This document shows positions 1,255-47,289 of a DNA stretch of 63,933 nt, one piece after another (the first letter of the stretch is position 1; each line of letters starts with the position of its first letter). The notes beneath the pieces were generated by a model. It ran no database searches and had not been told where the DNA came from. It worked only from the letters and a program-made list of their open reading frames with translations. Location of the stretch: contig NW_019217964.1 of NCBI RefSeq assembly GCF_002571385.2, positions 62,001-125,933 on the forward strand, in the 5' to 3' direction. The position numbers were made by a program, and so were the translations under genes. This DNA comes from Stylophora pistillata. Lineage: Eukaryota.

Positions 1255-4200
1255 ATATGCGGAGAAAATAAACTGATTGGAGGTGAGTGCGTTGGATTGG
1301 TCTTTTGTCACATTGTATCATAGAGAAAGTTTTTTCATATGATTCCTGCATCCTGACTGATTTTTTTTTTTTTTTTCAATTTTGGTCTGTTTTTTTTTTT
1401 CTTTTTTTTTTGGCTTGTTATTAATGAAGTCAGATTCTGAAGTGAGTGTGATTTAGGAAATGCTAGTTCTGAATATTTCTTTTTTTTTCAATATGCCTCA
1501 AGTGGCTGGATGGGATTGATATATTACAACCTCTAACAAAGTTTGTCCTTGAACAGGAGTTTTGAACCAAGTTCATAACTTAATTTGGCCACCGTTAAGA
1601 GTTTCTCAAGTGTACTTTTCGAGCGTTAGCCCCTCGTTTGACGAATTCACATTATCAACTCGGTTTATAAAACCAAATTATCTTGTAATACCCCCACCGA
1701 CGCAGCACCGCAGCTTTATTTAGAAACTTACCTCCTCAATTGATTTTATCCTTAAATAACTCAGCGTAATAAAAGCGTAATAACTCAGCGTAATAAAAGA
1801 ATATCTTCGTTAAAAGGGTCCGTCTCCAGGGTTTCACAGCTTCTGAGGCACACTTCTACCCAGTACTACTCGTTTATCGCCCCGTCCCAGTCCTCCGCTT
1901 TCCGGCGGTTCTTCCTGTACGTTGCTTAAGATTAAAATTTTATGCTTTTCGAATCTAACTTGCTATTTTGTATGTTGTATAATGTCAGTGCTCAGTGTGG
2001 AGACACCAGGACAACTGGACATTTGCTTTGCGACTCTGTTAAAGCAGCAAACAGAGGATATTCGCATCACCACTGAGGTGAAACCTTTCAGACCCTATGA
2101 GGATTTCGCTGGAACTGTTGCCGAGAGGTGTAATCGGAGCCTGGACGCTACTCATGTGGATAGCGTGACAAAAGAAGGATTGTATTACTTCCTGTGGTCT
2201 CGAGTCGAATACATGGGTATGTCCCTAATATATCAAGAATTATCATCCTTCTCTCTTCATCAGTCTGTTTGTGGCCAATTCAATATTTGGCCGGTCACGT
2301 GTCACGAAACGTACTTGAGGGCGTTCCAAGAAAATTCATATAACGCCAGTAGAGTGGCTTCTCTGTTCATGGTGTTTTGTCCATCTCTTTTATATTCTCT
2401 TCTATATTATCGTCCATGTACCTAAGCAACCAGCCAAGCGATGTACATGTTATCTTCGTCAGAAGAAGAATCAAGGCAGTCCACAACATGGTCTAAACTG
2501 TTTGAAAATATACTCAAATGTACTGAGAATGTTACGCAAATTTGTTTAAAAAATCCGAAAGTTTTTCCAGTTTTCGTACGTTAATATATGCAAAGCCGTT
2601 TTTTACGATAACTATTACATTGGACGTTTGTAATTAAACTGTAAAACAAAGACTGGTGAACTTTTATTCAGTGTTCCTCGGCGTGCTCCTGGTTTTCCCA
2701 CGTCATGTTCTCCCATAGGAAAATGATGCTCTCAGAGAAATGCGCATGCGCGTACTTCAACCCATGAGTCACACCACCAATTTCCTTCACAACAGTTTAC
2801 ATGTCATAGAAAAGGCTTTGTCCGTCGAATGTACAATCTTATGACTGTCTTTTTGTCTCTGAACTAGGCATAACTCAATTGGATCTTTGCAATACTTGGA
2901 CTGACGAAGCGATAGCTGCTATAAAAGCAAAGAAACTAGGGAATATCGTGGACTTATGGAAAGTGGTGGCAGAACGACAGGTAAGAAGCAGTCGTTAAAT
3001 GTTACAAAGTTAATTTCCAGTCGGTTTCACGAAAACCTCGAATTTAATTTGATGTCCAACGGTGGGCAGAACACTTTCATATAAACCTCGCCACCCCGAA
3101 TCTTGCAGAGCCTCAGTGGCAGAGAATCTCTCGAAGGGTCAAACGTCCATATCCGTTTGACTGGACTCAGATTTCCTCCACCTTCTATTTGTTTTTTTCT
3201 ATCAGTATGCTTGTATCCATGACTAAAAATCTTAATCTTTTAGGAAGAACTCCCTGACAACAAAACGACTCAAAGGGTGCTTCTTTTCGTCTTTGAGCTG
3301 AATCACCGTATGAACAGCACTGAAAAGGTGCAATGTTGCCTAAAAAACTTAATGAATTACGTCGACAGGTAGTAAGGTTTGAGCGCCTTCCCAATTTTTG
3401 GGTTTCAAAGTTCCATTCTTAGGTACTCAGGTTAAGATCTTAATTAGGAATGAAACTCATCCAAGATCACTCCTTATCATGGCAAGTTTCTTCCTGCCTT
3501 CTGTTCTGCGGAATGATGTAAATCAATATCTTGCAAAATCATCAAAGCGACTAAATAAAGTCGTGTTTTGGTTTCTTTCTCCGGGAGAGTTTTCCGGTTA
3601 CATGAAGTGCATGTTTTTGAACAACAACTCCCAGTCCGTACAGCAGGATACAGTCATGCATGTATAAAATTGAACCGTCATCCTGTCATTCATTAGATTA
3701 CAGTTTTGACGACCAATGTGGGAGTCATCATTAGAGTGATGTCAGCGATTGTTTGTGAGTCGGTCCCTTTTGAGTCGACCCTTCATCAAATGGTCCCTCG
3801 CCTTGAGATTTTGAAGACAATCAGGGAGTCAATTATTTCAGTTTACTTTACAATCGGAGCCGAATGCTTGCTGAACGGTATATATATCACGATTTCGTCG
3901 CATACATTATCTTCTTTAAAGTCTCTTTCTCCCATCCCGTTATTTAACAAATGGTAAACTCCACAGCATACACTATTGAGTTGTGGATGCACTTGAGAGG
4001 TTGCTAAGCACAAAAGAAGCGTGAGAGTCGCTCGAGGTGATAGGCGAGAGCGACTCTAGCTTCTTGAGTGCTTAACAAACCTCCCAAGTGCATCCATAAC
4101 TCAATAGTGTACGCTGTGGTGTTTACCAGTTGTTTTATAACATGACATTGATACATTGTAGCTAAAGAGTTCCCTTTTATTTAACAAATCTTTCGTGACC

Positions 4201-4688
4201 AGAAAAAAACAAGCATTTGCTCACGTCAGCAGCGTATACCCATGGGAAAATGGGGGACGCTAAATTGACCAATCAGAGCGCGCGCTTTGCTTTGGTTATG
4301 TTATAAAATTAGCTCGTCCTGTATGTGCTCAGTGTTGGAACAGACTTACTTAGACCGTTTTCTATTAGGGCGACTTCCCCGGCTGCCTTTTCTCCTTTCC
4401 CCCAGTGGAAAAACATAGGGACTAATCTCGTTTCCCCCCATGCTCCTGTTTTCTTTCAAGCCTCTCCCATAACCATAAAGTGTTAAGTCACCTCTAAATT
4501 TACGTTATCAAACTTAATTCCTACAGGTTTGGGTGATTGTGCGCATGAACAGTCTGAAGGACGCGGACGAGCTTTTAACATTCGATCTTCCGATCTTAAA
4601 GAAAATGGGCGCTCAAGTTTACACCAAGTGCAAGTCTATAAGGCCAGTCAGCCAATGGATCGAAGATCTTAAGAAACTGGTTTCTTAG
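1255..4688 (+). CDS. Tandem muconolactone-isomerase-like protein, paralog A (5'-partial). Exons 1255-1282, 1989-2216, 2868-2980, 4527-4688
   Basis: All introns GT-AG with consistent phases. Exon sizes 28/228/113/162 match paralogs B and C. Reads ICGENKLIGVLSVETPGQLD...EYMGITQLDLCNTWTDEAIAAIKAKKLGNIVDLWKVVAERQVWVIVRMNSLKDADELLTFDLPILKKMGAQVYTKCKSIRPVSQWIEDLKKLVS*. Exon 1 was not found in the window. Confidence 0.85.
1585..1735. repeat. Degenerate Penelope-like terminal repeat fragment
   Basis: Shares ttggccaccgt, tcgagcgttagccc and cccccaccgacgcagc blocks with the 22060-22180 repeat; another decayed copy lies at 33135-33300. Confidence 0.55.
3945..4306. mobile_element. Palindromic MITE-like repeat (inverted copy at 31314-31700; decayed copy ~27410-27570)
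   Basis: ~190-bp hairpin aacaaatggtaaac...gtttaccagttgtt plus an adjacent segment; a near-identical reverse-complement copy lies in the SID-c intron. Confidence 0.8.
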
Positions 4689-27402: not shown

Positions 27403-30400
27403 ATGTAATATAACATAACCACTGAAGTAAAGCACGGAAGGGTTACAAAACACTCAAGTAGTTGGGGTCGCTCTCAGCTGCCGCCTCGTTCGACTCCTAC
27501 GCTTCCCAGCCGGGCTCCCGTGTGCATCCATTGTTTAATAGTGTACGCTGTGGTGTTTTACCATTTTTCAAATATGTTTTTGTCAAATTTTTCTGTATAA
27601 ATATACTTGTCATGGTAAAGCGCATTAAGTGGAGTATAGCGTTAAAATACATCATGAAAACCTCCGATCACACCAAAACTGAAAAAGGTAACAAAAACTG
27701 ATGTTTCCCAAATCACTGACAAAATAAACTCGCGTCAAATAAATTCATACTAGTAGGCCACTTGTAGAAGGGACACTTCTAAATTTAAAACGTACTTCAA
27801 GTTTAACTGTGAACGTCATTTCTAACTACATCATGAGGCTATTTTATCTCCAAGTTAATATATGGGGAACAAAAAACTATAAGACGCTCTTTTAGCTTTG
27901 GTTGATTCAACAAATCTTCAAGAGGATGATGTTTCCTCAATCAAGTCTAATACATATTTGAAAGTACTGACGTGTTTAGAATAACCTCGTTTGTTGTGCT
28001 TTGTAACACAATGACTGATTGTAGTTGACCTTGGCAGCTACTTACTTTTATCCCCTTTTTGTCTCCCGGGTGTGCTTTTGAGTTCGTACCACTAGGACCT
28101 GGCCTTGCTTCTGCGCCTTGATCATCGAAACCACAATTTTGATTTCCAGTTGGAGTCTTTTGGGATTGAGAAGAAACATTTGGTGATTCATAGCTTACAT
28201 GAATCAACATAAGCGCCCCCATAAACAAACCAAAGGAAGATAGAATGTGCCACTGGTCATGATCGTCAAAAAATGCATAGGAAGCACATTCCCTGTTTAG
28301 ATCACGGGATTCTTCAGGAGACTTACTCTTATCTGTTGTTGCTCTTCCTAAGAAAATGTACAATGCATAACCAATAACAACCGCTATTGTAAAGCCAAAA
28401 ACCACTCTAAGGACTTTTAAACCAACATCACACCACCCTTTTGAACAATCCGTTAACCAGCTAGATGCAAGAAAGGATCCGGCCCCGACAATAGCACACT
28501 CTGACACACAAAAATATACAAAAACGTCGGTAAATTCCACTATGTCACGCATCCAAAGGAAAATCAGCGCACCTGGTATTAAAGCGAAACCACTTACGCA
28601 AGAAGTCCAAAATACACATTTCAAAATGCAGCATCCTGCGTTGCCCTCAGGGTATGTTTCATAGGCTTTTTTTGAGTCTGTCACCTCGCTCGGGCAACAT
28701 ATACAGCAACCCATGCATTTTTTTGGGCACAACTTGTACCCAGTCCACACCGCTAGAATGATCATCCAAAGAAGTAAGCATGAAATAAATAGGAGTTTGA
28801 TTACTGGGGCCATTCCCGCCTCTGAGTGATACATTGTTCCAAGATAATTCAGAGTGAATAGAGGAACCACAAAAAAAAAGAAAGAAGTTTGCTGCTCCCA
28901 CGCGCCTCTTTGCGTCTACAACTTCAGTGCAGGGCTTTGTTTCAATGCCGTTGTACATCAGCTCCACGCTTAAACTTGCCATGACAAACATAAAGGCTGT
29001 ATCGAACTGAAATGTTAAATTACCTGGACAAAGATGATAAATGGCAGAAAACATTACCTCAAAGCACAGAGCCCAGGCAAGAGCGTAACCTAAAGAAAAA
29101 CTATACTTTTTTTTTAAGTGCCTCTGCGAAGAGGGCCTCAAGATCATCGGTTTCAACTTTGGGAACGAACATTTCTCCGAGATGAAGAGAAATATCGGGA
29201 CACGTGAGCAAATGGCTCGGTAACTCTCTGTCAGGTATATTTAGGAAAGAATAATCTGGCTCTTTCAACTGCTTTTTTGTCAACTCATTAACTTTTTTTT
29301 CAAATTGCCTTTTCCTTTCTTCGTATGCATTCCCTAATCTGTCTACCCTATTTTTTTTTTGCAGAGCTTGCAAGTTTCCTGCATTGAGCAAGTACCTGTG
29401 ACTCCATGCAGAGAACATTAATAGCTAAAATAAAGCCATGGATGATGTAAGCTACACTACTAACCATTAAATTATGAGGAATATCGATATAACTTGCTCG
29501 ATAACAAAAATCGTTATAATAACAATGATCTCTATCACCCTCTTTAATCATCAAGAACCAGTCTGCAAAGACAAACTGGAATGAACCCACCATTAAAACC
29601 CAAACGACAATTAACGTGATGTAAGAAAACTTTTTGGGACCTCGACTTATGCTGTGTCTGAATATGACGGCCACCACAGCTAAGCAAAATTCACACCAGG
29701 TTATTGCGGTTTTCGTACTTTGATTTGTTGTTTTATAAGTGCAGCAGATGGTGCATTCTCTAAAAATAAGCCATGCAACAAAAGATATCGCAATACCAAC
29801 AAGACCACAAATTCGAACTAACACTAAAAGAGGTTTATCGTATGAGTAATCAAATGATCTATTCAAAGTTAATGTCACAGTCTTTGTTGCATCACTTAGT
29901 GTGTCACCAGAGGCATTCTTGATTGCAATTCCAATGAACCAACTGGAAGTGGAGGCGGTTAGTGGCGGAATAGAGAACTTGGACAAAGTAATCCGTCCCT
30001 TTTTGGCGAACGACAGACGGAGTGACTCTCCTTTGTAGTCCACAACGTCAATGTTGTCCCTGACATCCTTACAGTCACGTGATACTTTTAAGTAAGCTGA
30101 TACGTCATCAGACTCAGAAGTGACAGTCACGTCAAGTTGTGTACTTGAAATATCTTGTGTTGGGGTAAACTGATAAACAGCTGGATAAGAATCCTTTGCT
30201 CTCAGTACAACTTCCACTGCCTCATCTAATTGAATGCCTCCTTGATGTTGCATTTCTGCCATGAAACTGACGCCATTTGTGCCTGAAAACAACAAGTGCT
30301 TCCCACTGACTCTACCACTGGTTGGACAGAAAGGGCAACTTCTCCAACCAGCTTCAGACGTTGATATGCCAAGGTGACTAATTAGCAAAGACCCCTCGCC

Positions 30401-34256: not shown

Positions 34257-36888
34257 ATGAATCTTTCTTCGAATGAATTTCATTTTGATGATTGCCTTCT
34301 TCCAGTTTCTCACGTAATTGCGTTAATTCCAATTAACATTTTATCAAGTATCGTCGGAACCATCGGAAATTCTTTGGTGATCGCCACAGTTTATACCAAC
34401 AAGAGCTTACAGATTATTTCCAACTTCTGGTTGGCGAGTATGGCTGTGGCCGATTTGATGGTCACTGCCTTGGGTCAGCCACTGCTCATAGCATTCTGGG
34501 GGCTTCATGTGAACCACGAATGCAACGAGGTGGTGTCCGAAGCATTTCGTCTTGTGGGAAATATGTCGTGTTCAGCTTCAATTCTTCACTTGTGTTTTAT
34601 CAGTATCGATCGCTGTCTCCTTATCGTCCCACCAGTTCAAAGTAAAGCAATCCGAACTGTGAAGAGGTTTAAGTTAGCGTTGCTTATCGTTTGGATTTTT
34701 CCGGTTATTTATAGTCTTTTGCGATTAACAGTGAGCAAGAAAGCAACGTCCTATTTTACCGTCTTTGCCGCTGCCATATGTTACTCATCCTCGGAGACCC
34801 AGGGGCTGTGGGTCGATTTCAAGTTAGGACATGAAGAGCCCCTGGGGACATTGTCTTACAAGACTAGTTCCAAACGGTCGCAGTCGTTCTGCCATCTGAT
34901 TGGTGCCAGAAAATCTTTGTGTTTTTCTGCCCAATCAGAGAGAAGTGTGCTTTAGAGTCCTTTCGTGTGTTTTAACACGGACATATACTAGAAGCTCAGT
35001 TGCTCGCTATGGTTGTTTGGACCGTGCGACGGAGATTTGCTTGAGGTGAAAATTTTCAGTCTCAGCACACAATGTGAGAGAAATCGATCAGATTGTCCGA
35101 AATCTTACCGGAAATTATACTGAATACTTTCGCAGGTATCACTAGTACTAGAGAACGTGTTTTAAAGTTTGCGAGGTTTGTATACAACACGATGGTTGCA
35201 GTCATTGATATGTCGCTTTAGACGTTAAACGAGAGTTAAGCTTAAATCTTTCTAGATTTTTTGCATAATTTGCTGTGACTGAAACTTTGCCAATCCCGTA
35301 AAGTTATTTCGTCGCACGGGCCACGCAGGTATGTCGAACAACTGGTACTTGCGCAACTTTCTGTACGTGCCAAAATCTAATCTCATCTTCGCTTGAAAAA
35401 AAAAGAAAAGCTAAGCGTAGAAACTTTTGCTTATTAGATGTGGGTAGATGACCCTGTACAACTAAGCTGACATTTGCAATAAAGCAAACCCGCCCTTTCC
35501 GTCCAATATTTCTTGGTCTTTGGTTTTGTTTTTCCCATCGAAAACAGCATCGGATCGATTCCCAATGATCGAAGGTATTGAACTTGGTCTTCAACAATCG
35601 ACAGAAGAGGTGAGATGACAATGACCAAGGGACTAGAAGAGAATCCGTGGCCTTCCCAGCTCAAGAATTTCAACACTCTAGGCAGCAGTTAAAAGATTAA
35701 ACTCTTTCCAAACCCCTTCGGTAACTGCCCGAAAACATCTCTCCTTCCCTCGATGTTCTCGTTAATAAGTGTTTGTTCAGATTTTAATTAGCTAACCGGA
35801 AACACAGCTAAGCTTTCTCTTAGCACTTGCTGGAGGTCGTCCACGAACTTAACGTTTCCTGCAACCTTTGCGAACGACTTTACTACAAAGCGAAGATTAG
35901 ATTTTGGCGCGCACAGAAAGCAGAAAGCTTCGAAGGCGAAAGCGTGGCCCGTGCGACGAAATAACTTCACGGGATTGGCAAAGTTTCAGTCACAGCAAAT
36001 TATGCAAAAAGTCTAGAAAGATTTAAGCTTAAATCTCGTTTAACGTTTAAAGCGACACATCAATGACTGCAACCATCGTGTTGTATACAAACCTCGCAAA
36101 CTTTAAAACACGTTCTCTAGTACTAGTGATACCTGCGAAAGTATTCTGTATAATTTCCGGTCAGTTTTCGCGGACAATCTGATCGATTTCGCGTACACTG
36201 TGTGCTGAGACTGAAACTTTTCACCTCAAGCAAATCTCCGTCGCACGGTCCAAACAACCATAGCGAGCAACTGAGCTACTAGTATATGTCCGTGTTAAAA
36301 CACACGAAAGGACTCTAAAGTACACTTCACTCTGATTGGGCAGAAAAACACAAAAAGTTTCTGGCACCAATCAGATGACAGAACGACTGCGACCGTTTGG
36401 AACTAGTCTTGTAAGACAATGTCCCCAGGGGCTCTTCATGTCGTAACTTGAAATCGACCCACAGCTCCTGGGTCTCCGAGGATGTATGTTACTTGACCAT
36501 CATTTGCTGCTACATATTAATTATCATGAAGGTTTGGAATCGTGACAATGTTCGTAGTCACGCAAGACAGAGTGCCTCCCAATTGGTTGAACGTCGCGTG
36601 ACAGTCACGGTGGCTGTTGTTGTCGTGGTGTTCACAGTTTGTTGGATTCCAATAATGTACCTTCGCAGTGCCTATGCCCAGAGTAATGTTGGAGTAGTAT
36701 ACAACTGGGCGAGGACACTGGCTTTAAGCAATTCTGCAATGAATCCGTGGGTCTATTGCTTCCGTATGGAAGAATTCCTTGTTAATTACAAACGACTCCT
36801 GAAGTGTGGCTTTAGAAACAAGCGTGACGGAAGCACCATGAATGAACTTAATTTAGCGATAACAGTCAATTCAATCGTTTTAATGTAA
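34257..36888 (+). pseudogene. GPCR-2, paralog of GPCR-1, interrupted in TM5 by a transposon (307 aa if restored)
   Basis: 34257-34785 plus 36494-36888 join in frame (AICY-LTIICCY), aligning with GPCR-1 GICYLIIILCY; IDRC, CWIP and NPWVY are intact. Confidence 0.92.
34786..36484 (-). mobile_element. Non-autonomous DNA transposon, 1699 bp, ~540-bp TIRs, 9-bp TSD, RecQ-like helicase remnant (AcademH-like)
   Basis: TSD TATGTTACT at 34777-34785 and 36485-36493; CATCC...GGATG termini; arms 34786-~35326 and ~35942-36484; core reads (-) DVFGQLPKGFGKSLIF*...VIVISPLLSIVEDQV. Confidence 0.88.
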
Positions 36889-39261
36889 ATGCCATTGTTG
36901 TAGAGTCAGTTACCTGATGCGGCCAACATTCCAAATGGTCTGCGTAGAACTTATTTTGCTGATTATGAGCGGGTTTGTTGTTGTTTTTTTTTTTCGGTAA
37001 ATTCACTGCCAGAGTACTTGTAGCTGTGTCTGAAGTCGAGGTTTCCTGTCCAACTTTCAAAGTTAGACAGAAAGCCTCGAGTTTAGACACATATACACGC
37101 GCAGTTTAAATTAAAATTGCATTTTTACTGATTTTTTTCCCCCATTTTTTCCTCTTGTACATGTCTCGAGGAGACGAACAATAGAAATTGGTAAAGAATC
37201 CTAAAAATTGAAAATGGAATCAACGAAAGAATATTTCCTTTCTGTCTCGCATTCATGTGCTGAGCCTAATGTCTATAAACACAAAAATATGATCCAATAT
37301 TTCCTCAGCCTTAATTTTCCTTTTTTAAGATGTGTTTTTAATTTCCTTTTCCTTTTTTCGGTTAATTCGAAGCATACCACAAAGAAAAAAATAATTGAAT
37401 CATTACCAGGGGAGATCAAAAGTCTAAACTTTCTCTATAAAATCAATACTGGCATCAAGATCACAAATTATGGAGATATCGACAAAGGTAGTCAGCGAAC
37501 ATGCCGACTGGAAGTAAAACAAATTAAAATCAGGCAGAAACACAAGCGACTTCAAAACTATATCAGTTGTTGTTGTAATTTCTTGACCACTCAATTTGAA
37601 AGCTCAGCGGAAACAGATTTGGCTGATAATATCACTCATTTCCACAATAACAAAAATAAAAGGTTCTCAGAGATCAATACAAAGCAAAAACAATGGTATG
37701 ATATGGAGTGTTTACGTAAATTCAGTTATCTTTTATTTCAATTTACTGCTTCTAGGATCAAGATAACAAAACGAAAACGAATTTAAAGGACCGTACACAA
37801 ATGAGAAAAGACTTAAGGCATTCAAAGTTAAAAAAAAATAAATAAAAAATTATCAAAAAAAAATCATCTAAAAAAATGACATATATTTTAATTCCACTTA
37901 CTCGAGGTTGCGCCCTTTGGGTCAAGGAGATAATTCCTGAATTTTAAGCATTTGTAGTATGTCCTAAATTTAAATAAAAACTTGGCCAAACTATTGATCT
38001 ATGGCTATTAGTAACATCATGCACGCGAGCTATATTATTATTTTTTCAGATACAAAATACTTTACCTGAACAGCTTTTGGCAAACAGAAATTTATATTTT
38101 TAGCTATCAAATGTCTCGTCAGTCAAAGTGCTTTATTGGGAAGAATTAAAAGAAACCGCGAACGCTTCTGTGACTCGCCCCTTTAAATAAGTTTATACCA
38201 CTGACGATTGCGGTACGCTAAAAGAAGTATGTGCAATTACAGCGCAACATTCAAAAACACCGCATCGCTTGAAAAAGCTACAATACAAAATTTTTTACCA
38301 AACAGACGCAGTTCACGAAAGAATATAATATTTATTTGCTTTTTTTCATGTGGGAAAATGAATGAATTGCACATTCCAAACCTCTGTGCAACCGACATCA
38401 CGGGTACAGTCGGCTGCGCGCTCAAAACTTGGTCAATTAATGGCTTAAGCTTCTAATAAAAAACCCGAAAGAGGCTATAATCATGAAGCACTTCGCAACT
38501 GCCGGATGAAAGACACCCATCCTTATGTATCATTTAATGTTACCTTTCCTCGGTTTACGAAACAATAATCCATCGAAATTACTAGAACTGATATTGCTTG
38601 AGACGGCTTTTCACAAGTTTTTGTTTCCGACAAAAATAAAGAAAATCATGGTATATTATATTCAAGAGCAATTAACTTAGGCCGACCAAGACAATATAAT
38701 AAAGTGAGTGATATTTAGCATGACGCTACAGTATCTTAACAGACATAGATATATTCTTAATTATAGGTAGATAAAAACAGATATTAAAAAAAAAAAAAAA
38801 ATTTGTCTTTGTTTTGAAAACGCACAAACTAAATATTTTGATATTACTACTTTTAAGGCCATTGAGAAGTTCTCAAAAATTGAAATATAATTTCTTTGAG
38901 GGATTAAGCTCACAGTTTAAGGATAGGAAGTTTAAGATAACATCCGATGGCTGCCAAAATGAGCTGAATACCTCTTAATAAGAGAACCAACAAAAGACGC
39001 AATGATATAAGACATTTACGTTTTAACCAATCGAATCTCAGCATCGAAAATAATGCAATTTGTGTACTTCCTAACCATGACTTAACCCATTACCCCGTAG
39101 CTATATGAACTAAACCATTCCTAAAAGCATTGGCTGACAAACTAGGAACCCACCAGATAAATTACCCACATTAATCGCCTTCCTAGGACCAGTCGATTCG
39201 TGGAATTAAGAATATTTCAGGTCGTAGACGATCTTCCATTTCCGTTCAGCAAGAAGTCACA

Positions 39262-42200
39262 ATGTCGCTGTTATATTTCTTTCAAACAAGCCTCGAGTAC
39301 CATGGGATAACTACGAAAGAGCTTTATCAACTATGGTTTAAGCACGCTCAAGCTGCTTTTAAGATGTACGAACAAGGTATTATGAAATACGCCTTCAAGG
39401 TAGGAACAGACTACGATTTATAAACATAATACCAGTTGATACTCGCTTTACACGCCGATTATGCTATAGCACATTAAGCTTAAGGGATTAACTGAAAGAA
39501 ACTGCATTCTTGATATCTCAACATAAAGGATCTTATTTCATCAGGGTCTGTAGATGCTACTCTCGAAATATTCTCGTGACAAAAGAAGAAGTATTCTCAA
39601 TATAAACGGACACTGTTATGGAATACGTTTAAACTTGATCGTAGCAACATTTATGCCTATAAATCTTTGTTTGGGCCACAGTAAAATTGGATTTACATAT
39701 CTTATTTTAAAATTTCGTTACACCTGTATTGCCCAGACGATAAGCTATGAATCAGCGTGTGTCAGCAGACACAACCGGGCGATAAGAGACAATAGCAACC
39801 ATGAACCAAATATTCACCGCGAGATTACTCAGAAAAACTGAATTATAATTTTCAAGTATGTGTGGAATGTACCTTAAGCATCAAACAAGAGGGGCAGGTT
39901 CGAGCCTTTCTGCCTTTGTTTTTGGTAAGAATGGAAAAAATTGCCGCTGAATGTGTAGCTTCTTGACATATATGTCCATTGCTAAATTATGTATTATCAC
40001 TATTATTTATTATTTATATGAGACAACTTTGTGAGAATCATTTCGTGTCTGTATAAATGCCGAGGTCTCTGTTCCACTGAAAACAATTCGCGGGCTCAGA
40101 AGACTCTTATCTGCTCGCGAGGGAGCTTTTTAACCTTAGGGTGGGTATCAAAAAAATTCTAGAATGGAGAGATGAAGTAGTGACAATGAGAGGAAGCTCC
40201 TGCTACTGGCAGAAGCCATTTTGAAGAAAGCCTCGTGAATGTCTCTGTTCCGTACCACTTGCCATACTGCGGACTGCGAGACGCCAAAGTTTAGTGAATT
40301 TGTCAGATATCAATCTATCCCCGCGCTTCAAGTGACAATAGATAGATTAACATCTGAGCCACAACCCAAAAGTGTCGCGCAGGCACGAAGCAAAAAATTT
40401 TTCCGAAGGTGTTTTTTTTTTTTTTTGATTAACTGAAACTGGGTTACTTTCAACCATTCTCCGTTTCGCCACTGAGCTAAATGGACATGGCTATTTCATG
40501 TTTGTGAGGTTTCCAAGTATTTCATGTACGGAAAAGTTATTTTGAGAGCGGAAAGGTCAAGAACGTGGTTTGTAGCTTTGAGATTGCTCACGCACAACAT
40601 TATATGTGATAATTGACGACCAGTCACCAAACTTGTAGGGGCGAAGAGGGTACGTATACGCCATTTAATTTATGTAATTAGAGAAGAGCCACTTTGTCAA
40701 CTGATCAAGTTAAGGAACTGGTCATTATTTATCCCCGGAGGGGAGGGTCGAAGGATTTTAGATCTGTCATGATAAAATTTACCTGATTTCCCTCCCCCAC
40801 CAAGGCTCGGGTATATCCCCCCCGTTTGACAAGAGGTTTCACAAAGTGTCCTCCTTTTTAAAATTTACTTAAACGCACACGATTATGTAACACGTGAATT
40901 TCCAACCGAATTTCGAACCCATTTCGAACCGTCCTAGCGCAGTGCTTAATCTCGAACAAACGCGTTTTCATCGGCTACCCGCAAGTTCTTTGGCACACTG
41001 GAAGCATTTGCAAATTATTATCTTTTTTCGAGTTATAATGCGAAAAAAACAACGTACATGTCTTCAGAATCAAAGTTTCGACTCCCTATCAAAATAATCC
41101 CTTGTTTCCACCCCAATAGTGAATCGGAAAGTAGTTCTAATAGTGCTAAATGATGTCTCTAATAGCTTAGTTAGTTTTTCATTCATTTCCGTCTCTTCAC
41201 GTTATAGATAGCTGGAGAAAGAAAAGTTCTTGGAGGTAATAAGATCTTAATTAGATAAACGGTTTTCATGTCTTATATAACAAAGAAAAGGACCTGGATG
41301 CTCAATATTGTGTGACAATGCTATCCATCTGGAATTAGCGATGAATAATCGCAGCGAGGGGCTCATTAGTGTATATGGTGACGGGCCTCTCATATCTATC
41401 TCTCCATTCCTCACAGCTATTTCACCAGTAAATGTATTCTTTAATATGAATTGGAAAATTTCTTTTAGTTTTTCCCGGAGTTCGTAGCGTCACTGATTTT
41501 GTTCCCAAAAGAGTTTAAAAACGCCACCCAAACTGTGCGGAAAAGGGTTGACAAAGAAAACAACTCCCTCTCTCCCCTCTCTCCCCTCTCTCCCCTCTCT
41601 TGCCTATCTGGTCTCCCCTCTCTCCCCTCTCTCCCCTCACTCCCCTCTCTCCCCTCTCTCCCATTTCTCCCCTCTCTCTCCTCTCTCCCCTCTCTTGCCT
41701 ATCTGGTCTCCCTAGCTTGTTTACTTCCTGCCGAAGCCGAACATGATTAGCGAATGAAATGGTGAAAAAAGTCAGTTTGCTCTGAGAGCTTCTTACTTTA
41801 TTGCCGCATCTTCCATTCCTACATTCTGATGAAACAGCAATAAAAACGGAAGACAAGAACTGACTCTAACTTCATTCTTACGCCTTCTGTTTTTCATTTA
41901 GTGATGTCAGTGGAGTCACCCTCAGTACTGGACACGTGCTTTGTCGAGCTACCTCTTTACCAGGCCCTCGGAGATCAGTTGCACTCGACATTTACCCCGT
42001 TGAGACAATACGAAGGATTTGCGTCAGATGTGAGCGAGAGAGTTGGGAACGGAGAAAATTACGGGGATGAAAAGTCCATCTTAAAGAAGGGGCTCTTCTA
42101 CATTCTGACGTTTACTGTGGAATACGACCCTAGTAAGATATATGTGATATAGAGGACAGTTTTTGTTTTATCCTGAGTGTTGAAATTCTCTCTCTGTCGT

Positions 42201-43286
42201 GTGTACGAGGAGAACGAGTGAGGGATATAATCAATTCGAGATAAATCCGTACCACCAGCAGACTTGCAATGTTCTGTTTATTATATAGATATTGATGAGA
42301 TATATAAATCGAAGACGATTTGGAAACACGTTATGAGAGCGCCGAATGTAGAGATAAACTGTATTTAAACTCAGCTCGTTGGGTTGGTGAGAGGATTGCT
42401 GCAATGTCTGAAATGGGCAGGCAGATTTTGTTTCATAGTAGCGCGCATTTCAGTTATCTGGGTCACCTGTTTAGGTTCGAGCTACATTTAAGGCTTTATC
42501 TGAATCAGACAGATCCTCTTCATCAATTCTTCAATCCCTTCTTCATCTCATTTCATTTCATCCTTTAAAAGCCATGACACAACAAGACCTGTTTGCTGTC
42601 TGGGCTGAGGAAGCTAAAGAGGCTCTCAAGGCAAAAAAGTCTGGAATCATTCTAGACTTATGGAAAGTGGTAGCAGAACGTAAGGTACTAATCACTTTCA
42701 ACTAATATCACACTATGCGGGCGCCTGCATCTCGGTTCGGTCAGATAGACTTAGTATGCACTTAATCAAACGTCTTACCGAATCCATTATTTTCACTTGT
42801 GGTTGTTTGATAATGCCCCATGCTGTCTGCATAGCGCGAACAACCCATTCAGCCATGCAGTTTCATGATGGTTTTATCGGGTGTGTATATAGTGTCGGCT
42901 CCAGAAAACATCACAGTATTTGACTTCGGACACATACTGGCAGTATAATCACGCCCCCATAAACATTAAGGCCGCATTAGGTACATTTTACTTGCTGCTG
43001 TACTATTTATGTGCATAAGTATGGAACCATGTACCAATTCCCCTCTTTCCTTGTTAAATAACTCTGTTTAACGCACTTGGACAATCATCAAAATATCGTC
43101 AAATGTTGCATATGATGTGTGTTGCAGGTTATAGCCGTTGTCTGTGTGGATGATCCGACTGATGTTGACAGAATGTCACTGGACCTGCCAATCATGAAAA
43201 AGATGGGAAGCAAAGTCCGTATAGATTGCAAGTCGATACGGCCAGTAGAAGAATGGGCCGCAGATCTACAAAAGCTAGCAGAATAG
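39262..43286 (+). CDS. Tandem muconolactone-isomerase-like protein, paralog B, complete, 222 aa. Exons 39262-39399, 41208-41235, 41902-42132, 42572-42684, 43128-43286
   Basis: GT-AG introns; 669-nt open frame: MSLLYFFQTSLEYHGITTKELYQLWFKHAQAAFKMYEQGIMKYAFKIAGERKVLGVMSVESPSVLDTCFVELPLYQALGDQLHSTFTPLRQY...LFYILTFTVEYDPTMTQQDLFAVWAEEAKEALKAKKSGIILDLWKVVAERKVIAVVCVDDPTDVDRMSLDLPIMKKMGSKVRIDCKSIRPVEEWAADLQKLAE*. Two internal repeats resemble CatC. Confidence 0.88.
41564..41712. repeat. Pyrimidine 9-bp minisatellite (CTCTCCCCT)n in intron 2 of paralog B
   Basis: Direct tandem repeats with a duplicated tcttgcctatctggtctccc unit. Confidence 0.9.
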
Positions 43287-44343
43287 GCCTAAGGAGCATC
43301 TAGAAACGTTGGACTGTAAACCCCTCTCGTGCTGAATCCAAAATTGATCGTAGTTAATGATGTATTAAAACTATCAAGAAAAAGTCAGAGTTCTAAGTTA
43401 CTTTAGATAGTAGTATTAACACATTTAAGACTTCAAGTGAAGAATTCATTTGCATGTAGCAACAAAAAATTGCCAACGATTTTAGATGAATTTCAAGGTA
43501 GGAATACGAAAAAAATTAGCAGATTTCAAATAAATCGAGCACAAATTGCAAATTTCGCGCTGTAGTTGTTTCAATTGTTTGATATACGAGAAAAAAAAAG
43601 TTTTGGTATGATGATAAGATTAGCTGTTGGAATATTAGTGACCCTCAAATTCTACAATTCCTCTTAAAAAAGGGCATATCTGTGGGCACAGGAGATGGGA
43701 TGGAGCGAGGTACTGGGAACGAGAGCACTTAAAGCTGACATCTATCAAGAGATCCTTTTGATCTCTTATAGCTATCAATTGTAAGCAGATTTTCGTTTGA
43801 AGGCAAACTTCCAAAGGATGGAATTTCGCTGCTGCTTTCCAGACCGTTCCAGATTTCGAAAGCCAATTCTAATCCTAAATCTTAATCATTCCCTCTCGTC
43901 TGGGATGGTTGGAGAGAAACAAAGACCAAATATTTGGAGGATTCTGGAGGCGTTAAGAGCCAGATACCTCCAACGTAGATCAATAGGGTTATTTAAGTTT
44001 CCGGGCTCTATAACGTGATAAAGCCAAGCGGGATGTTGGGAGAACATGAGCAAAGCGACGATCTATGTGTCAATCTAATTACTAATGACGCTAAATACGG
44101 AAAAATTCATTGGTGAACAGTTCGTGCTAACAAATATTTACTACAGGGGTTGTCAACTTAATTTGCATAATTTGCATGCATTAACCTTTTTTGCATGAGA
44201 AACAATTGCAGTCGCAGTATATATCAAGGGAATTTTAGGAACAAAACTGACGTCAAGGTAACAACAAGAAGGCTTAGAGACTGACGTTCCTGACAAAAGT
44301 GGTGGTCTTACGTTCAATAGCATTTGGTGCGGCGCCTGCTAAC

Positions 44344-46899
44344 ATGAGCTTATTGTACTTCATAAAGTTTACCATTGAGTACAAACGAATACCACAAGAA
44401 CAGTTTATCAAAACTGGGCAGCAGAAGCAGAAGTTGCTCTAAAAGCAAAAGAAAAAGGAAAAATACTACAGATATGGAAAGTAAGAATATGTTTTTAGCC
44501 ACTGACCGGTTGCTATTTTTCAAAGATTCCCCAAAAGACCTTAAGTTTACAGTTGATTCGCCGTATTGATGTCAACTAATTTATTATAAGAGAGATAACT
44601 TAGACCTTCCAAAACCTTAGGTCTATACAAGTTTGGGGCAATTAAGTTTTATAGTCTCTGGAACGAGCAGCTTACAATGAATCGCTGGACATGAAAAACG
44701 CCTCTCTGTGCCAAGGAATTACAAAACTTTTGATGAAGAAAGTACTACTTGAACAATAAGTTAACAATAAGATCTGAATGTGTCCATCAAACCAAAATTA
44801 TGTAGGCGTAAGTCGTGTCATAAGCGTGAACCAAGTTTGATCAAACAATATCAGTCAGAACAAGCCATTGCACATCCTGACTTGTTCAATTGAGCACGTC
44901 AAAGAAGAGTTAGAGTGTCATTGGCAAAACCATGATCCGTAGATATCGGGCAGATATCGGTTTCCCTAGCTTCTCGGTTAAAAGAGACAGTTTAAGGTAT
45001 CAGTCTAGGGATATCAACTGATTCCCTAGCGATTAGCGTAACCATGATATTTCTATTCGCAAAAGAATGCGAAGCAAATTATAAAGATTTGTCTAAAAAA
45101 GTAATTCATGACATGGGTACATAACACTATATTTCATCTCTCCTTTTTGCCATTTGAAGTAAACAAAAGATTAAAATTTTGTAATCTCATAATGTAAGTG
45201 ACTGTTTCGTTTAATCCTTTCAGTTGGTTGGAGAGCGCAAAGTATTTTGTGGTAAGTGAAGAAGAGAAACTTCCTGAGGAAAGTTAATTTCAATTTAAAA
45301 TTTTAATGAATGAACGTAGTCGCGAAATTTTAATCTGTTCCCAGTTATGAAAGCAGAAAATCCCGATGAAATAGATAGGCTGTCATTTCATTTGCCAATG
45401 TTCAAGGAGATGGGTGATCAGGTGCATATGGAAGTTTCACCCCTCAGGCCTTACGCTGGACTAGCAACAGATATCTGTAAAAGAGTCAATAATGGAGATG
45501 AAACGGTGTTTGAAGACATACCTACTGTACCTAAAGCAGGACTTTTCTACTGGATAACGTTTATTATAGAATATCCAGGTAAGATTGCATGTCCATGACA
45601 TTAGTTAGCTCTTCGTAAACTGCAAAAATATTCTTTGTCTTTTTATGACTTCATCTCATTACACCGCTTAATTCAAGGTTGACTTCCGTCGTCAAAATAC
45701 TGTCTTCCTTCTAGGAAAACCGTAGGCACTTTTGTTTTCTAATCCAGCTGCCTTTATGCCGGCAAATGCTAAACCTTTTAATGGCCTACAAGAACTTAGC
45801 AGCTAGTTCTCTGTGGCTAACTAGCTGGTAGATTATCGGAGCGCTTTCTTAACAGAATCCTTCGGAGGTAGTTCATTAGGTGAAAGTATTTTCTGAGAGT
45901 TTTATATTTCTCTGGTTTTTATTTCATTGATGCAGGTAAGACGCAAGACGAGTTGTTGGCCTTTTGGTTACAGGAGGCCAAAGCTGCGTTAGGAGGAAAG
46001 AAAAGCGGAAAAGTGGTTGACCTGTGGAAAGTAGTTGGGGAAAGAAAGGTAGGCAAAGTTTCCATACAACCCCACACCTCATTATGCATCTAGTTCTTTC
46101 ATAAAAGAAAACGGCCAAAACAACAGATTACTTTTGAGACCAAGGCGTGTTTTGAAAATAGCAGGAGGTCCTAAGGAAATCAAAATTCCATGCGAATTTC
46201 AACTTCCTACGAAACACTCACAGGAAAAAGCGACATTACGGCTCGTTTCCAGTCTCCAGCCTTGTTTCATTGTCACTGTTCGAGGTCGATAGAGGGATAT
46301 AGTTCCCTGGTTGGTTCGTCGAAATAAAATTTGAATTAACTGGCCGCTAAATTGATTTGTTCATTCCAGCAAATATATTCGGATAAGACAGTAATGACAT
46401 TCGCACCCTTGATTCACTTATAATTGGCAAGTCTTTCTCCACAAATTGAGATTAACTTGGTTGTTTCTGCCAACGATCGATGTGATACTAGGGCTCTAAA
46501 GGGTCTTGCTAAAATGGTTAAAATTGTACGCTTAGTGTTCAGTTGAAAGATGCTTTTAGTGAATGACACTGGCTAGTATTACACATGTTAGTACTTCGAA
46601 TGCTCTACAAATGAGCTAAAGGAACCTCGTGGTCGGCTAGGCGGTTTAAGTGTTCAGTTTTTCCCAAGGGCCTTCGAGGTAAGACTATAATAGTCTGCGC
46701 ATGTCTCTTGAAACTTATGAACATTTTGGCGTTGCAGGTGTACATCCTGTTATGCGTGGAGAGTCCGTACGAGGTGGATCGTATTTCGTTTGACCTGCCT
46801 ATGATGAAGCAAATGGGAGACTGTATACACATGGAAGTCAAGTCCGTCAGGCCTTATGAAGCCTTCCATGATGACCTGAAGAAAATGGTGGCTAGATAA
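44344..46899 (+). CDS. Tandem muconolactone-isomerase-like protein, paralog C. Exons 44344-44480, 45224-45251, 45345-45578, 45936-46048, 46738-46899; 1-nt deletion in exon 1
   Basis: MSLLYFIKFTIEYKRIPQE/[frameshift]VYQNWAAEAEVALKAKEKGKILQIWK|LVGERKVFCV...; exon 1 is 137 nt versus 138 nt in B; the remaining exons are open with canonical splice sites. Confidence 0.82.
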
Positions 46900-47289
46900 C
46901 TTAGCAGTTGATTTAAATTTTGGCGTTACGAACTGCAATGAAAGGCTGCGTTTTGAAGGAAGAATGGGATGGGAAAGGGGTTAAAAACTCCATCGATTGT
47001 TCTGAATATTTCATGTGTGGTTCCTAGGTATATCACTTTTTCTACCAGCTACTTCGAGTGGGCCAGAGCGAACGCATTGTTTCTCTTGTTGTAGAACTTA
47101 AAGAAGTTTAAACCACAAGTTTCCATTTAGCAAAAGTACCCATCACACCTTACAAGCAAATACACTATTTGTATGTATGTATGTAAATCTTTACGTATGA
47201 TGGACGATCCTCGCAGTATCATACGTATCTAATACCGCAGTTCAAAATATATGAACTTCATATATTCATTGTATCTTATGTAAATCTTT

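What the first reader, a model, noticed from the sequence alone, without database searches (positions are those of the whole stretch)
39262..46899. Animal gene family encoding tandem muconolactone-isomerase (CatC)-like domains; three spliced paralogs
Seen: three 5-exon genes (A 1255-4688, B 39262-43286, C 44344-46899) with conserved exon sizes and phases; B and C encode ~222-aa proteins of two ~100-aa repeats, and A is 5'-partial. The ORF track shows only fragments of them. Known: bacterial muconolactone delta-isomerase of the beta-ketoadipate pathway (Pfam MIase) is a ~96-aa single-domain decamer with the pattern LF..M.V..P..M...E...A..L...G....LWR..G......V.S...L...L..LP+...M.I+V..L. Inference: repeat 2 (LFYILTFTVEYDPTM...EEAKEA...SG...LWKVV...DLPIMKKM) fits this pattern by eye. 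Animals lack that pathway, so this may be an uncharacterised, possibly horizontally acquired enzyme family for aromatic, lactone or halogenated metabolites, assembling as a pentamer of pseudo-dimers.
Basis: partly seen in the sequence, partly recalled or inferred. Interest (0 to 1): 0.88.

Follow-up and report, generated by a model that had tools for sequence, protein, structure and literature searches.

The report
Coral tandem muconolactone-isomerase-like gene family
A stony coral carries a cluster of real, spliced genes for small proteins made of two muconolactone-isomerase-like domains; the family is old in animals, has no studied member, and does not look like the bacterial aromatic-degradation enzyme it is named after.

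Summary
Genes A, B and C have the same five exons and intron phases, including a 28-nt microexon. Two spliced transcript contigs from a close relative confirm every B junction. That 222-aa B-type ORF scores 73.6 bits on Pfam MIase (cut-off 26.7), with two matched stretches. Its AlphaFold model (pLDDT 93.5) superposes on chloromuconolactone dehalogenase ClcF (Z 13.2, rmsd 1.4 Å).

- Gene C has a 1-nt frame break in exon 1 in this assembly.
- The contig holds two more paralogs upstream of the window, one of them broken.
- The family also occurs in jellyfish, Trichoplax and amphioxus, so it is not a recent transfer into corals.
- Its nearest kin are not CatC. They are a very conserved ~104-aa bacterial subfamily (Cyanobacteria, Chloroflexota, Proteobacteria) with no cat-gene neighbours in the loci read.
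- Both groups fail NCBI's CatC equivalog model (38-43 bits against 130.6).

The catalytic Glu27 equivalent is kept in domain 2 but lost in domain 1 of the coral A/B/D lineage. Function is unknown. An enzyme acting on some substrate other than muconolactone is the most likely reading; a ligand-binding role like snail ovorubin (best whole-protein structural match, Z 17.1) is the main rival. Databases already flag the domain automatically, and I found no paper on the animal family.

The parts
1255..1282 (+). Gene A exon 2, a 28-nt microexon (ICGENKLIG plus 1 nt). Exon 1 lies outside the window, 664 nt upstream.
   Evidence: AG/GT-flanked candidate shared by all three paralogs; sequence context; exon 1 found at L104:4338-4484.
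1989..2216 (+). Gene A exon 3: second half of domain 1, the linker, and the first strand of domain 2.
   Evidence: tblastn with B exon 3, E 6e-12; splice sites read.
2868..2980 (+). Gene A exon 4: helix 1 and strand 2 of domain 2, including the Glu27-equivalent motif (W.DEA).
   Evidence: tblastn E 6e-11; splice sites.
4527..4688 (+). Gene A exon 5, with stop codon.
   Evidence: tblastn E 2e-12; translation and stop.
39262..39399 (+). Gene B exon 1: start codon and the first 46 aa of domain 1. The transcript's 5'UTR reaches back to at least 39137.
   Evidence: Sequence read; transcript contigs L006/L007 align to 39137-39403.
41208..41235 (+). Gene B exon 2, a 28-nt microexon (IAGERKVLG plus 1 nt).
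   Evidence: 100% match to transcript contigs L006/L007.
41902..42132 (+). Gene B exon 3: second half of domain 1, the linker, and the first strand of domain 2.
   Evidence: transcript block 41900-42131.
42572..42684 (+). Gene B exon 4, in domain 2. Carries WAEEA, whose second Glu is the Glu27 equivalent.
   Evidence: This exon alone hits Pfam MIase at E 0.0018. Transcript block 42571-42690; column analysis.
43128..43286 (+). Gene B exon 5, with stop codon. The 3'UTR extends to at least 43426.
   Evidence: transcript block 43126-43426.
44344..44480 (+). Gene C exon 1. It is 137 nt, with a 1-nt frame break near 44404-44410; the frame from the ATG stops at 44440-44442.
   Evidence: by alignment with the intact ortholog transcript L008 and with B exon 1.
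45224..45251 (+). Gene C exon 2, a 28-nt microexon (LVGERKVFC plus 1 nt).
45345..45578 (+). Gene C exon 3.
   Evidence: E 4e-18; ortholog transcript L008 aligns here.
45936..46048 (+). Gene C exon 4.
   Evidence: E 1e-11.
46738..46899 (+). Gene C exon 5, with stop codon.
   Evidence: E 5e-14.

Best explanation
They belong to a five-copy cluster on one contig, in the order E (broken), D, A, then about 35 kb of other genes, then B and C.

Each intact gene encodes a soluble protein of about 222-226 aa with no signal peptide. The protein consists of two MIase-type ferredoxin-like domains, and the model fits these packing as an intramolecular pseudo-dimer, that is, an alpha+beta barrel.

The two domains arose from one ancient internal duplication of a domain of the bacterial ~104-aa 'VVDLWKCVG' subfamily type. 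This predates the split of Cnidaria, Placozoa and Cephalochordata. In corals the family then split into a conservative C type and a fast-evolving A/B/D type.

Inferred mechanism: the protein is a small-molecule enzyme that uses the conserved Glu of domain 2 (the equivalent of ClcF/MIase Glu27) as a general base for a proton-transfer reaction of the isomerase or eliminase kind, on a carboxylate-bearing metabolite that is not muconolactone. In A/B/D-type proteins domain 1 has lost this Glu and serves mainly to complete the barrel and pocket.

The confidence given covers identity, architecture, expression and ancestry. The enzymatic reading alone I put at about 0.45.
For: Shown by tool results:
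- Exon structure and GT-AG introns.
- Spliced transcripts that match every B junction.
- Purifying selection on B: 15 synonymous against 6 non-synonymous differences from the L006 transcript, dN/dS about 0.10.
- Pfam MIase at 73.6 bits for the B-type ORF and 79.3 for the C-type ORF, two matched stretches each. Most other relatives score 35-76 bits.
- AF2 model with pLDDT 93.5 and two beta-alpha-beta-beta-alpha-alpha-beta-alpha domains. ClcF 3ZO7_B matches at Z 13.2, rmsd 1.4 Å over 84 aa.
- Internal repeat in the C-type protein: 44% identity, E 1e-33.
- Domain 2 of the B type is 51% identical to the single-domain protein of Ca. Sororendozoicomonas, E 9e-37. An HMM of the bacterial subfamily scores 60-130 bits on most well-preserved animal domains.
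- Tree: CatC lies on a long branch (100/100). All tandem domains form one clade (UFboot 80, SH-aLRT 93, 82% of bootstrap trees). The clade holding every domain 1 has support 99/92.
- Named hosts: Stylophora, Pocillopora, Porites, Montipora, Desmophyllum, Oculina, Rhopilema, Aurelia, Trichoplax, Branchiostoma.
- Glu27 column: Glu in 100% of the bacterial subfamily, 89% of domain 2, 62% of domain 1 outside the coral A/B/D lineage, and lost in A/B/D domain 1. The PDB holds an E27A ClcF structure with substrate, 3ZO7.
- Animal genes flank the cluster: GPCR and SID1-like ORFs.
Against: - No biochemical or ligand evidence exists for any member, animal or bacterial.
- The family fails the CatC equivalog model and lacks most CatC-specific conserved residues. 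The chemistry is therefore extrapolated from one shared Glu and the fold.
- The best whole-protein structural match is ovorubin, which from my own knowledge is a non-enzymatic carotenoprotein (Z 17.1).
- The bacterial relatives have no conserved neighbours that would point to a pathway.
- Tree support for a single origin is moderate, there are only 104 columns, and two long-branch domain-2 rows fall among domain 1.
- Many family members come from samples of unknown taxon, so the range across eukaryotes is not settled.
- Read-level RNA evidence on this exact genome is missing. The reads call failed, and the transcripts used come from a relative at about 95-97% identity.
Confidence: 0.8

Rival explanations
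1. The proteins are non-enzymatic ligand-binding, carrier or storage proteins. The two-domain barrel would hold a hydrophobic or pigment ligand, as the apple-snail egg carotenoprotein ovorubin does, and the MIase ancestry would be only historical.
For: - Ovorubin 9UAJ_A is the top whole-protein structural match: Z 17.1, rmsd 3.0 Å over 181 of 184 residues. The next two-domain barrels, the chlorite dismutases, reach Z about 12.
- Domain 1 has lost the Glu27 equivalent in three of the four coral lineages.
- Tandem gene expansion is common for binding proteins.
Against: - There is no sequence signal to ovorubin, even at E up to 10.
- The coral proteins have no signal peptide (strand 1 starts at residue 3 in the model), whereas ovorubin is secreted (own knowledge).
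- Domain 2 keeps the Glu and a set of conserved polar residues shared with the bacterial subfamily, and B is under strong purifying selection. Both fit an active site.
Confidence: 0.2
2. One reading: a true muconolactone or chloromuconolactone isomerase/dehalogenase, taken up horizontally by corals to process aromatic, lactone or halogenated metabolites.
For: - Significant Pfam MIase match, the fold match to ClcF, and the shared Glu27.
- Domain 2 is 51% identical to the protein of a coral-associated gammaproteobacterium.
Against: - TIGR03221, the CatC equivalog model, gives 38-43 bits against a cut-off of 130.6.
- CatC-specific residues are replaced: W40-R41-H42, Y50, H65, F74-P75-Y76 and C85-R86-H87-P88.
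- CatC is a distant outgroup in the tree.
- The family is shared with jellyfish, Trichoplax and amphioxus and forms one clade, so there was no coral-specific transfer.
- The closest bacterial genes are not in cat or pca operons in the loci read.
Confidence: 0.05
3. The genes are an artefact: bacterial contamination of the assembly, chance ORFs, or dead pseudogenes.
For: - Gene C has a frame break and paralog E has frame breaks.
- The Pfam family search over the coral's own genome found nothing.
Against: - The genes have spliceosomal introns with conserved phases in three paralogs.
- Spliced transcripts exist, and dN/dS is about 0.10.
- The genes sit on a 566,628-nt contig among animal genes.
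- Orthologs are annotated in at least eight animal genera.
- The blank is explained by exon-by-exon scoring.
Confidence: 0.02

Closest known systems
Bacterial ~104-aa single-domain 'muconolactone Delta-isomerase family protein' subfamily (motif VVDLWKCVG; Nostocales and other Cyanobacteria, Chloroflexota, Alpha-, Beta- and Gammaproteobacteria, Nitrospinota). It is uncharacterised.
   Same: - 45-51% identity to the coral domain 2.
- Shared motifs: EY in strand 1, W..EA, DLWK.VG.R, LPIMK..G, and R.Y near the end.
- An HMM of this subfamily scores 60-130 bits on most well-preserved animal domains.
- The same Glu27, and the same failure of the CatC equivalog model.
   Different: The bacterial proteins have a single domain, presumably forming intermolecular dimers, and no introns. 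They are extremely conserved across phyla, at 62-96% identity. The animal proteins are fused tandem domains with a linker of about 15-20 aa and a diverging domain 1.
Muconolactone Delta-isomerase CatC (EC 5.3.3.4; PDB 1MLI) and 5-chloromuconolactone dehalogenase ClcF (PDB 3ZNJ, 3ZO7, 4FPI).
   Same: - Same Pfam family, PF02426.
- Same ferredoxin-like fold: Z 12-13, rmsd 1.4-2.3 Å, about 20% identity.
- Conserved Glu27, G38, W44, a basic residue at 45, G48 and L71-P72.
   Different: - CatC and ClcF are 94-96-aa single-domain subunits. They form decamers (own knowledge; PDB entries hold 10-20 chains each).
- They sit in aromatic-degradation operons (own knowledge).
- Their specific residues at positions 40-42, 50, 65, 74-76 and 85-88 are not shared with the coral family.
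- They are a long-branch outgroup in the tree.
- The coral family reaches only 38-43 of the 130.6 bits needed for the CatC equivalog.
Ovorubin, the PV1 egg carotenoprotein of the apple snail Pomacea canaliculata (PDB 9UAJ).
   Same: It is the best structural match to the whole two-domain model: Z 17.1, rmsd 3.0 Å, 181 of 184 residues aligned. It is also an animal protein built as a tandem alpha+beta barrel.
   Different: Identity is 9%, with no profile signal. Ovorubin is a secreted, glycosylated, pigment-binding oligomer used for egg defence (own knowledge; PMC2997075, PMC10168382). The coral proteins lack a signal peptide. Homology is unproven.
Chlorite dismutase, HemQ and DyP: fused two-domain ferredoxin-like barrels.
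   Same: The same overall architecture, two ferredoxin-like domains fused into one barrel: Z 10-12 over about 205-210 residues.
   Different: Rmsd is above 4 Å and identity is 6-10%. These are haem enzymes. There is no sequence relation, and no haem-ligand residues were identified here.

Membership tests
Pfam MIase (PF02426), the muconolactone isomerase-like family | Profile match above the curated gathering score of 26.7 bits | tested here: met
   - B-type transcript ORF L006:127-792 scores 73.6 bits, and C-type L008:176-844 scores 79.3 bits, with two matched stretches each.
- Ten relatives score 23-76 bits.
- Window exon 4 of B alone scores 18.8 bits, E 0.0018.
- The window's own exons were searched one at a time. 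The joined model was not searched.
Pfam MIase (PF02426), the muconolactone isomerase-like family | Ferredoxin-like beta-alpha-beta fold that superposes on solved family members | tested here: met
   AF2 model with pLDDT 93.5. ClcF 3ZO7_B matches at Z 13.2, rmsd 1.4 Å over 84 aa; 3ZNJ, 3ZNU and 4FPI match at Z 12.2-12.6.
Pfam MIase (PF02426), the muconolactone isomerase-like family | Conserved Glu at position 27, the residue replaced in the ClcF E27A structure 3ZO7 | tested here: met
   Present in domain 2 of A, B and C and in 89% of all domain 2. Present in domain 1 of the C type. Lost in domain 1 of the coral A/B/D lineage, where B has His. Its catalytic role comes from my own knowledge of the ClcF literature and was not tested here.
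Pfam MIase (PF02426), the muconolactone isomerase-like family | Single ~96-aa subunit that assembles into a homodecamer (five dimers) | tested here: not met
   The subunit is a fused tandem of two domains, 222 aa. The oligomeric state could not be tested.
CatC, muconolactone Delta-isomerase proper (EC 5.3.3.4; NCBIfam TIGR03221 equivalog) | Score at or above the equivalog cut-off of 130.6 bits | tested here: not met
   The coral B and C types and the bacterial subfamily score 38-43 bits, the jellyfish protein 25.1 bits, and the amphioxus protein has no match. Canonical CatC genes score 132-139 bits on Pfam MIase, against about 70 for the subfamily.
CatC, muconolactone Delta-isomerase proper (EC 5.3.3.4; NCBIfam TIGR03221 equivalog) | CatC-specific conserved residues: W40-R41-H42, Y50, H65, F74-P75-Y76, C85-R86-H87-P88 | tested here: not met
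   The column-by-column comparison shows these replaced by V-V-D, R, D, M-K-x and V/C-T/K-P/S-L/V. Only two CatC sequences served as reference.
CatC, muconolactone Delta-isomerase proper (EC 5.3.3.4; NCBIfam TIGR03221 equivalog) | Pathway context: catechol 1,2-dioxygenase, muconate cycloisomerase and enol-lactonase in the same genome or operon | tested here: inconclusive
   - The window's neighbours are GPCR and SID1-like genes.
- The bacterial subfamily loci show no cat or pca neighbours.
- A whole-genome test in the coral was not attempted. The family search over the intron-split genome missed even the five MIase genes, so a blank would mean nothing.
Ovorubin / PV1 carotenoprotein family | Detectable sequence homology to ovorubin subunits | tested here: not met
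   The profile of alignment A4 searched against all PDB sequences at E up to 10 does not list 9UAJ. Only the structural similarity is seen (Z 17.1).
Ovorubin / PV1 carotenoprotein family | Secretion and carotenoid binding | not testable with these tools
   The model starts its first strand at residue 3, which leaves no room for a signal peptide. Ligand binding needs an experiment.

The most novel reading that the evidence does not exclude
The coral genes belong to an unstudied, animal-wide family of fused MIase-like barrels that descends from one ancient bacterial-type gene. The family would catalyse, or bind, a metabolite not yet linked to animals. The apple-snail PV1/ovorubin egg carotenoproteins, so far described as a family without relatives, would be a secreted and highly diverged offshoot of it.
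Probability: 0.15. Interest if true: 0.65.

Novelty: new variant of a known kind. Interest (0 to 1): 0.45.

Why it matters
MIase is known from the bacterial and fungal beta-ketoadipate pathway. This work shows a fused, intron-bearing, selectively constrained version that is conserved from placozoans and cnidarians to amphioxus. Its closest kin are an extremely conserved bacterial small-protein subfamily that also has no known function. Finding the substrate or ligand would assign a function to both groups at once, and would show whether early-branching animals keep a piece of small-molecule chemistry that vertebrates seem to lack.

For coral biology, the lineage-specific expansion to five copies, with one domain degenerating, suggests ongoing functional diversification. 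The practical value is limited for now. Databases already label the domain automatically, and nothing yet ties the genes to a phenotype.

Tried and rejected
There is therefore no read-level junction or frameshift evidence. No piece of those places was passed to any search tool afterwards. Local scripts used the whole window file only as a BLAST subject.
- They were searched exon by exon by reference. Natural intron-free transcript contigs of relatives (L006, L008) stood in for the full protein.
- Pfam MIase search over the coral's own genome found nothing although five genes exist, because exons are scored singly. This is not evidence of absence.
- Complex prediction with two copies of the B-type protein gave no answer. 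It counts neither for nor against oligomerisation.
- Conserved neighbours of the bacterial subfamily: nothing is shared across phyla. A response regulator, a cNMP-binding protein and an SDR appear sporadically. The two apparent 'conserved' clusters were antisense ORFs over the gene itself.
- Sequence link to ovorubin: none.
- Literature: no paper on animal MIase-domain proteins or on the function of the cyanobacterial subfamily. The ClcF structure paper and the paper for 9UAJ are not in the library.
- The taxon of many tandem-domain hits from metagenome or transcriptome sources (P0023, P0024, P0028, P0201 and others) could not be determined. P0023, P0201 and P0264 are intronless single ORFs on contigs with sparse genes, which look eukaryotic.
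- Contamination and chance ORFs were rejected (see rival explanations).

Full report
**Observation.** The region is eukaryotic DNA with about 38-40% G+C. ORF listing and direct reading of the sequence give gene B as five exons:

| Exon | Window coordinates |
|---|---|
| 1 | 39262-39399 |
| 2 | 41208-41235 |
| 3 | 41902-42132 |
| 4 | 42572-42684 |
| 5 | 43128-43286 |

Every intron has AG...GT, and the intron phases are 0, 1, 1, 0. The coding length is 669 nt, giving 222 aa.

Exon 2 is a 28-nt microexon. I found it by scanning the introns for AG/GT-flanked open segments of length 3n+1. The same short exon turned up in all three genes: IAGERKVLG in B, LVGERKVFC in C and ICGENKLIG in A.

Genes C and A have the same plan:
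- C: 44344-44480, 45224-45251, 45345-45578, 45936-46048, 46738-46899.
- A: 1255-1282, 1989-2216, 2868-2980, 4527-4688.
- A's first exon lies 664 nt upstream of the window, at L104:4338-4484.

tblastn of B's exons against the window recovers the paralogous exons at E 1e-11 to 4e-18. It also recovers the internal repeat, with exon 3 matching exon 5 of C at 5e-7 and exon 4 matching exon 1 of C at 4e-6.

**One flaw in gene C.** Exon 1 of C is 137 nt, one base shorter than in B. Alignment with an intact orthologous transcript puts the gap near 44404-44410, and the frame from the ATG stops at 44440-44442. I could not decide whether this is a real mutation or an assembly error.

**How the spliced model was handled.** They were searched one by one by reference. 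For the whole protein I used natural intron-free contigs that the tools returned.

**Expression and constraint.**
- Two Logan contigs from separate runs (L006 of 936 nt, L007 of 912 nt) carry one uninterrupted 222-aa ORF (L006:127-792).
- They align to the window in five blocks that match B's exons plus UTRs: 39137-39403, 41206-41235, 41900-42131, 42571-42690 and 43126-43426. Identity is 91-100%.
- All four junctions, microexon included, therefore exist in RNA of a very close relative.
- Over whole codons, counted exon by exon, B differs from that transcript at 15 synonymous and 6 non-synonymous positions, giving dN/dS of about 0.10.
- PolyA RNA-seq runs labelled coral hold 41-49% of the sampled words of window 41150-46950. 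That fits transcription but is not specific.

**Organism and locus.** The contig is 566,628 nt long. That is the same length as the record holding the Stylophora pistillata proteins XP_022792842.1 and AWC38_SpisGene11117, whose sequences match the translated exons of two further paralogs upstream of the window.

The contig thus carries five copies, in this order:
- E, which has frame breaks in exons 4 and 5.
- D, which is intact.
- A.
- About 35 kb holding GPCR and SID1-like genes.
- B, then C.

**What the protein is.**
- B's exon 4 alone already hits Pfam MIase at E 0.0018.
- The B-type ORF scores 73.6 bits and the C-type ORF 79.3 bits, against a cut-off of 26.7, each with two matched stretches. 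Ten further relatives score 23-76 bits.
- By sequence, the only solved relatives are muconolactone isomerase 1MLI and chloromuconolactone dehalogenase ClcF.
- An AlphaFold model built on a 33-sequence alignment has pLDDT 93.5 and pTM 0.87, and shows two beta-alpha-beta-beta-alpha-alpha-beta-alpha domains.
- Domain 1 superposes on ClcF at Z 13.2, rmsd 1.4 Å over 84 residues.
- The two halves of the C-type protein are 44% identical, E 1e-33.

The tandem-MIase reading is confirmed.

**What it is not.** NCBI's equivalog model for muconolactone Delta-isomerase (TIGR03221, cut-off 130.6 bits) gives only 38-43 bits. A column-by-column comparison shows two things:
- Shared with CatC: Glu27, Gly38, Trp44, a basic residue at position 45, Gly48 and Leu71-Pro72.
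- Replaced relative to CatC: positions 40-42, 50, 65, 74-76 and 85-88.

**Nearest relatives.** An exhaustive profile search with the exon-3 alignment found 78 proteins. Besides tandem proteins of about 215-226 aa, it found single-domain proteins of about 104 aa.

These belong to a bacterial subfamily annotated 'muconolactone Delta-isomerase family protein', and sometimes mislabelled 'transporter':
- It is widespread in Cyanobacteria and present in Chloroflexota, Alpha-, Beta- and Gammaproteobacteria, Nitrospinota and a Polyangiaceae MAG.
- Identity is 62-96% across phyla.
- It includes Ca. Sororendozoicomonas, whose protein is 51% identical to B's domain 2, E 9e-37.
- An HMM of this subfamily scores 60-130 bits on most well-preserved animal domains.
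- The bacterial genes stand alone, with no cat or pca genes and no neighbour conserved across phyla.
- They also fail TIGR03221.

**Distribution and history.** Named hosts of tandem proteins are:
- Scleractinia: Stylophora, Pocillopora, Porites, Montipora, Desmophyllum (three neighbouring genes) and Oculina.
- Scyphozoa: Rhopilema and Aurelia.
- Placozoa: Trichoplax.
- Cephalochordata: Branchiostoma belcheri and B. floridae.

All are annotated as uncharacterised or hypothetical. One carries the automatic name 'Muconolactone isomerase domain-containing protein'. Other members sit as intronless ORFs on gene-poor contigs of unknown eukaryotes.

A maximum-likelihood tree of 116 single domains gave these results:
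- CatC sits on a long branch, with support 100/100.
- All tandem-protein domains form one clade (ultrafast bootstrap 80, SH-aLRT 93, 82% of bootstrap trees).
- A clade holding every domain 1, plus two long-branch domain-2 rows, has support 99/92.
- Coral A, B and D group together in both halves of the tree. Their domain 1 sits on a long branch, and the C type is separate.

The simplest history is one duplication and fusion of a subfamily-type domain before cnidarians, placozoans and chordates diverged, followed by a coral-specific expansion. The data do not resolve whether the founding gene came from bacteria by an ancient transfer or is older still. A recent transfer into corals is excluded.

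Intron positions differ between the two halves of the gene. In domain 1 the introns fall after WK and after the microexon. In domain 2 they fall after EYDP and after ERK. This fits intron gain after the fusion.

**Function.** Nothing is known experimentally for either the animal or the bacterial group. No relevant paper was found.

The PDB holds a ClcF E27A structure with substrate (3ZO7). From my own knowledge, Glu27 is the proposed proton-abstracting base in ClcF and MIase. Conservation of its equivalent is as follows:

| Group | Glu at position 27 |
|---|---|
| Bacterial subfamily | 100% |
| Animal domain 2 | 89% |
| Domain 1 outside the coral A/B/D lineage | 62% |
| Domain 1 of the coral A/B/D lineage | lost (His in B) |

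My best reading, at about 45%, is an enzyme that performs a proton-transfer reaction on a carboxylated small molecule other than muconolactone. Domain 2 would be catalytic, and in A/B/D-type proteins domain 1 would be a structural partner.

The main rival, at about 20%, is a ligand-binding role. The best match to the whole model is the apple-snail egg carotenoprotein ovorubin (9UAJ_A, Z 17.1, rmsd 3.0 Å over 181 of 184 residues). That is well above the next fused barrels, the chlorite dismutases at Z about 12. There is no sequence signal to ovorubin, and the coral proteins lack a signal peptide.

The pentamer-of-pseudo-dimers idea could not be tested, because the two-copy complex job gave no answer. 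A feature search in the ESM Atlas points to tandem MIase clusters of about 201-206 aa in Actinomycetota (score 0.89, a lead only), so fusion may have happened more than once.

**Verdict.** This is a real, expressed and constrained gene family with a correctly recognised domain, and no function has been studied for any member. It is a fused animal variant of a known fold family, not a CatC enzyme and not a coral-specific acquisition. Automatic annotation already flags the domain, so the novelty lies in three things: the architecture, the link to the conserved bacterial subfamily, and the possible structural kinship with ovorubin.

Noticed in passing
window 44344-44480: Exon 1 of gene C is one base short (137 nt), with the gap near 44404-44410 and a stop at 44440-44442. 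The ortholog in another coral (L008:176-844) is intact. This is either a pseudogene or an assembly error.
   Followed up: partly
L005 (contig C181:51169-54390) and L003 (C181:54580-57795), upstream of the window: Two more paralogs. E has frame breaks in exons 4 and 5. D is intact. The deposited model AWC38_SpisGene11117 (P0227, 316 aa) wrongly fuses parts of E and D.
   Followed up: partly
window about 41500-41860 (intron 2 of B): A low-complexity repeat that reads as Ser-Pro-Leu or Gly-Glu-Arg runs in several frames.
   Followed up: no
window 10602-11564, 18537-20927, 27947-30388, 34257-36888: Between genes A and B lie an intronless rhodopsin-type GPCR ORF, several SID1/SIDT-like ORFs in tandem, and a GPCR split into two ORFs. 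Other first-stage notes (s1-780711, s1-780727) also record these.
   Followed up: no
L015-L094 (bacterial loci): The ~104-aa bacterial MIase-like subfamily is 62-96% identical across distant phyla, has no conserved neighbours, and is sometimes annotated 'transporter'. It is an unusually conserved small protein of unknown function in its own right.
   Followed up: partly
L105:7702-8355, L106:2765-3427: Intronless tandem MIase genes on gene-poor contigs of one ENA assembly (ERZ25072740), one of them lying a few kb from an Exo_endo_phos (LINE-like) ORF. These come from an unidentified eukaryote that has several copies.
   Followed up: no
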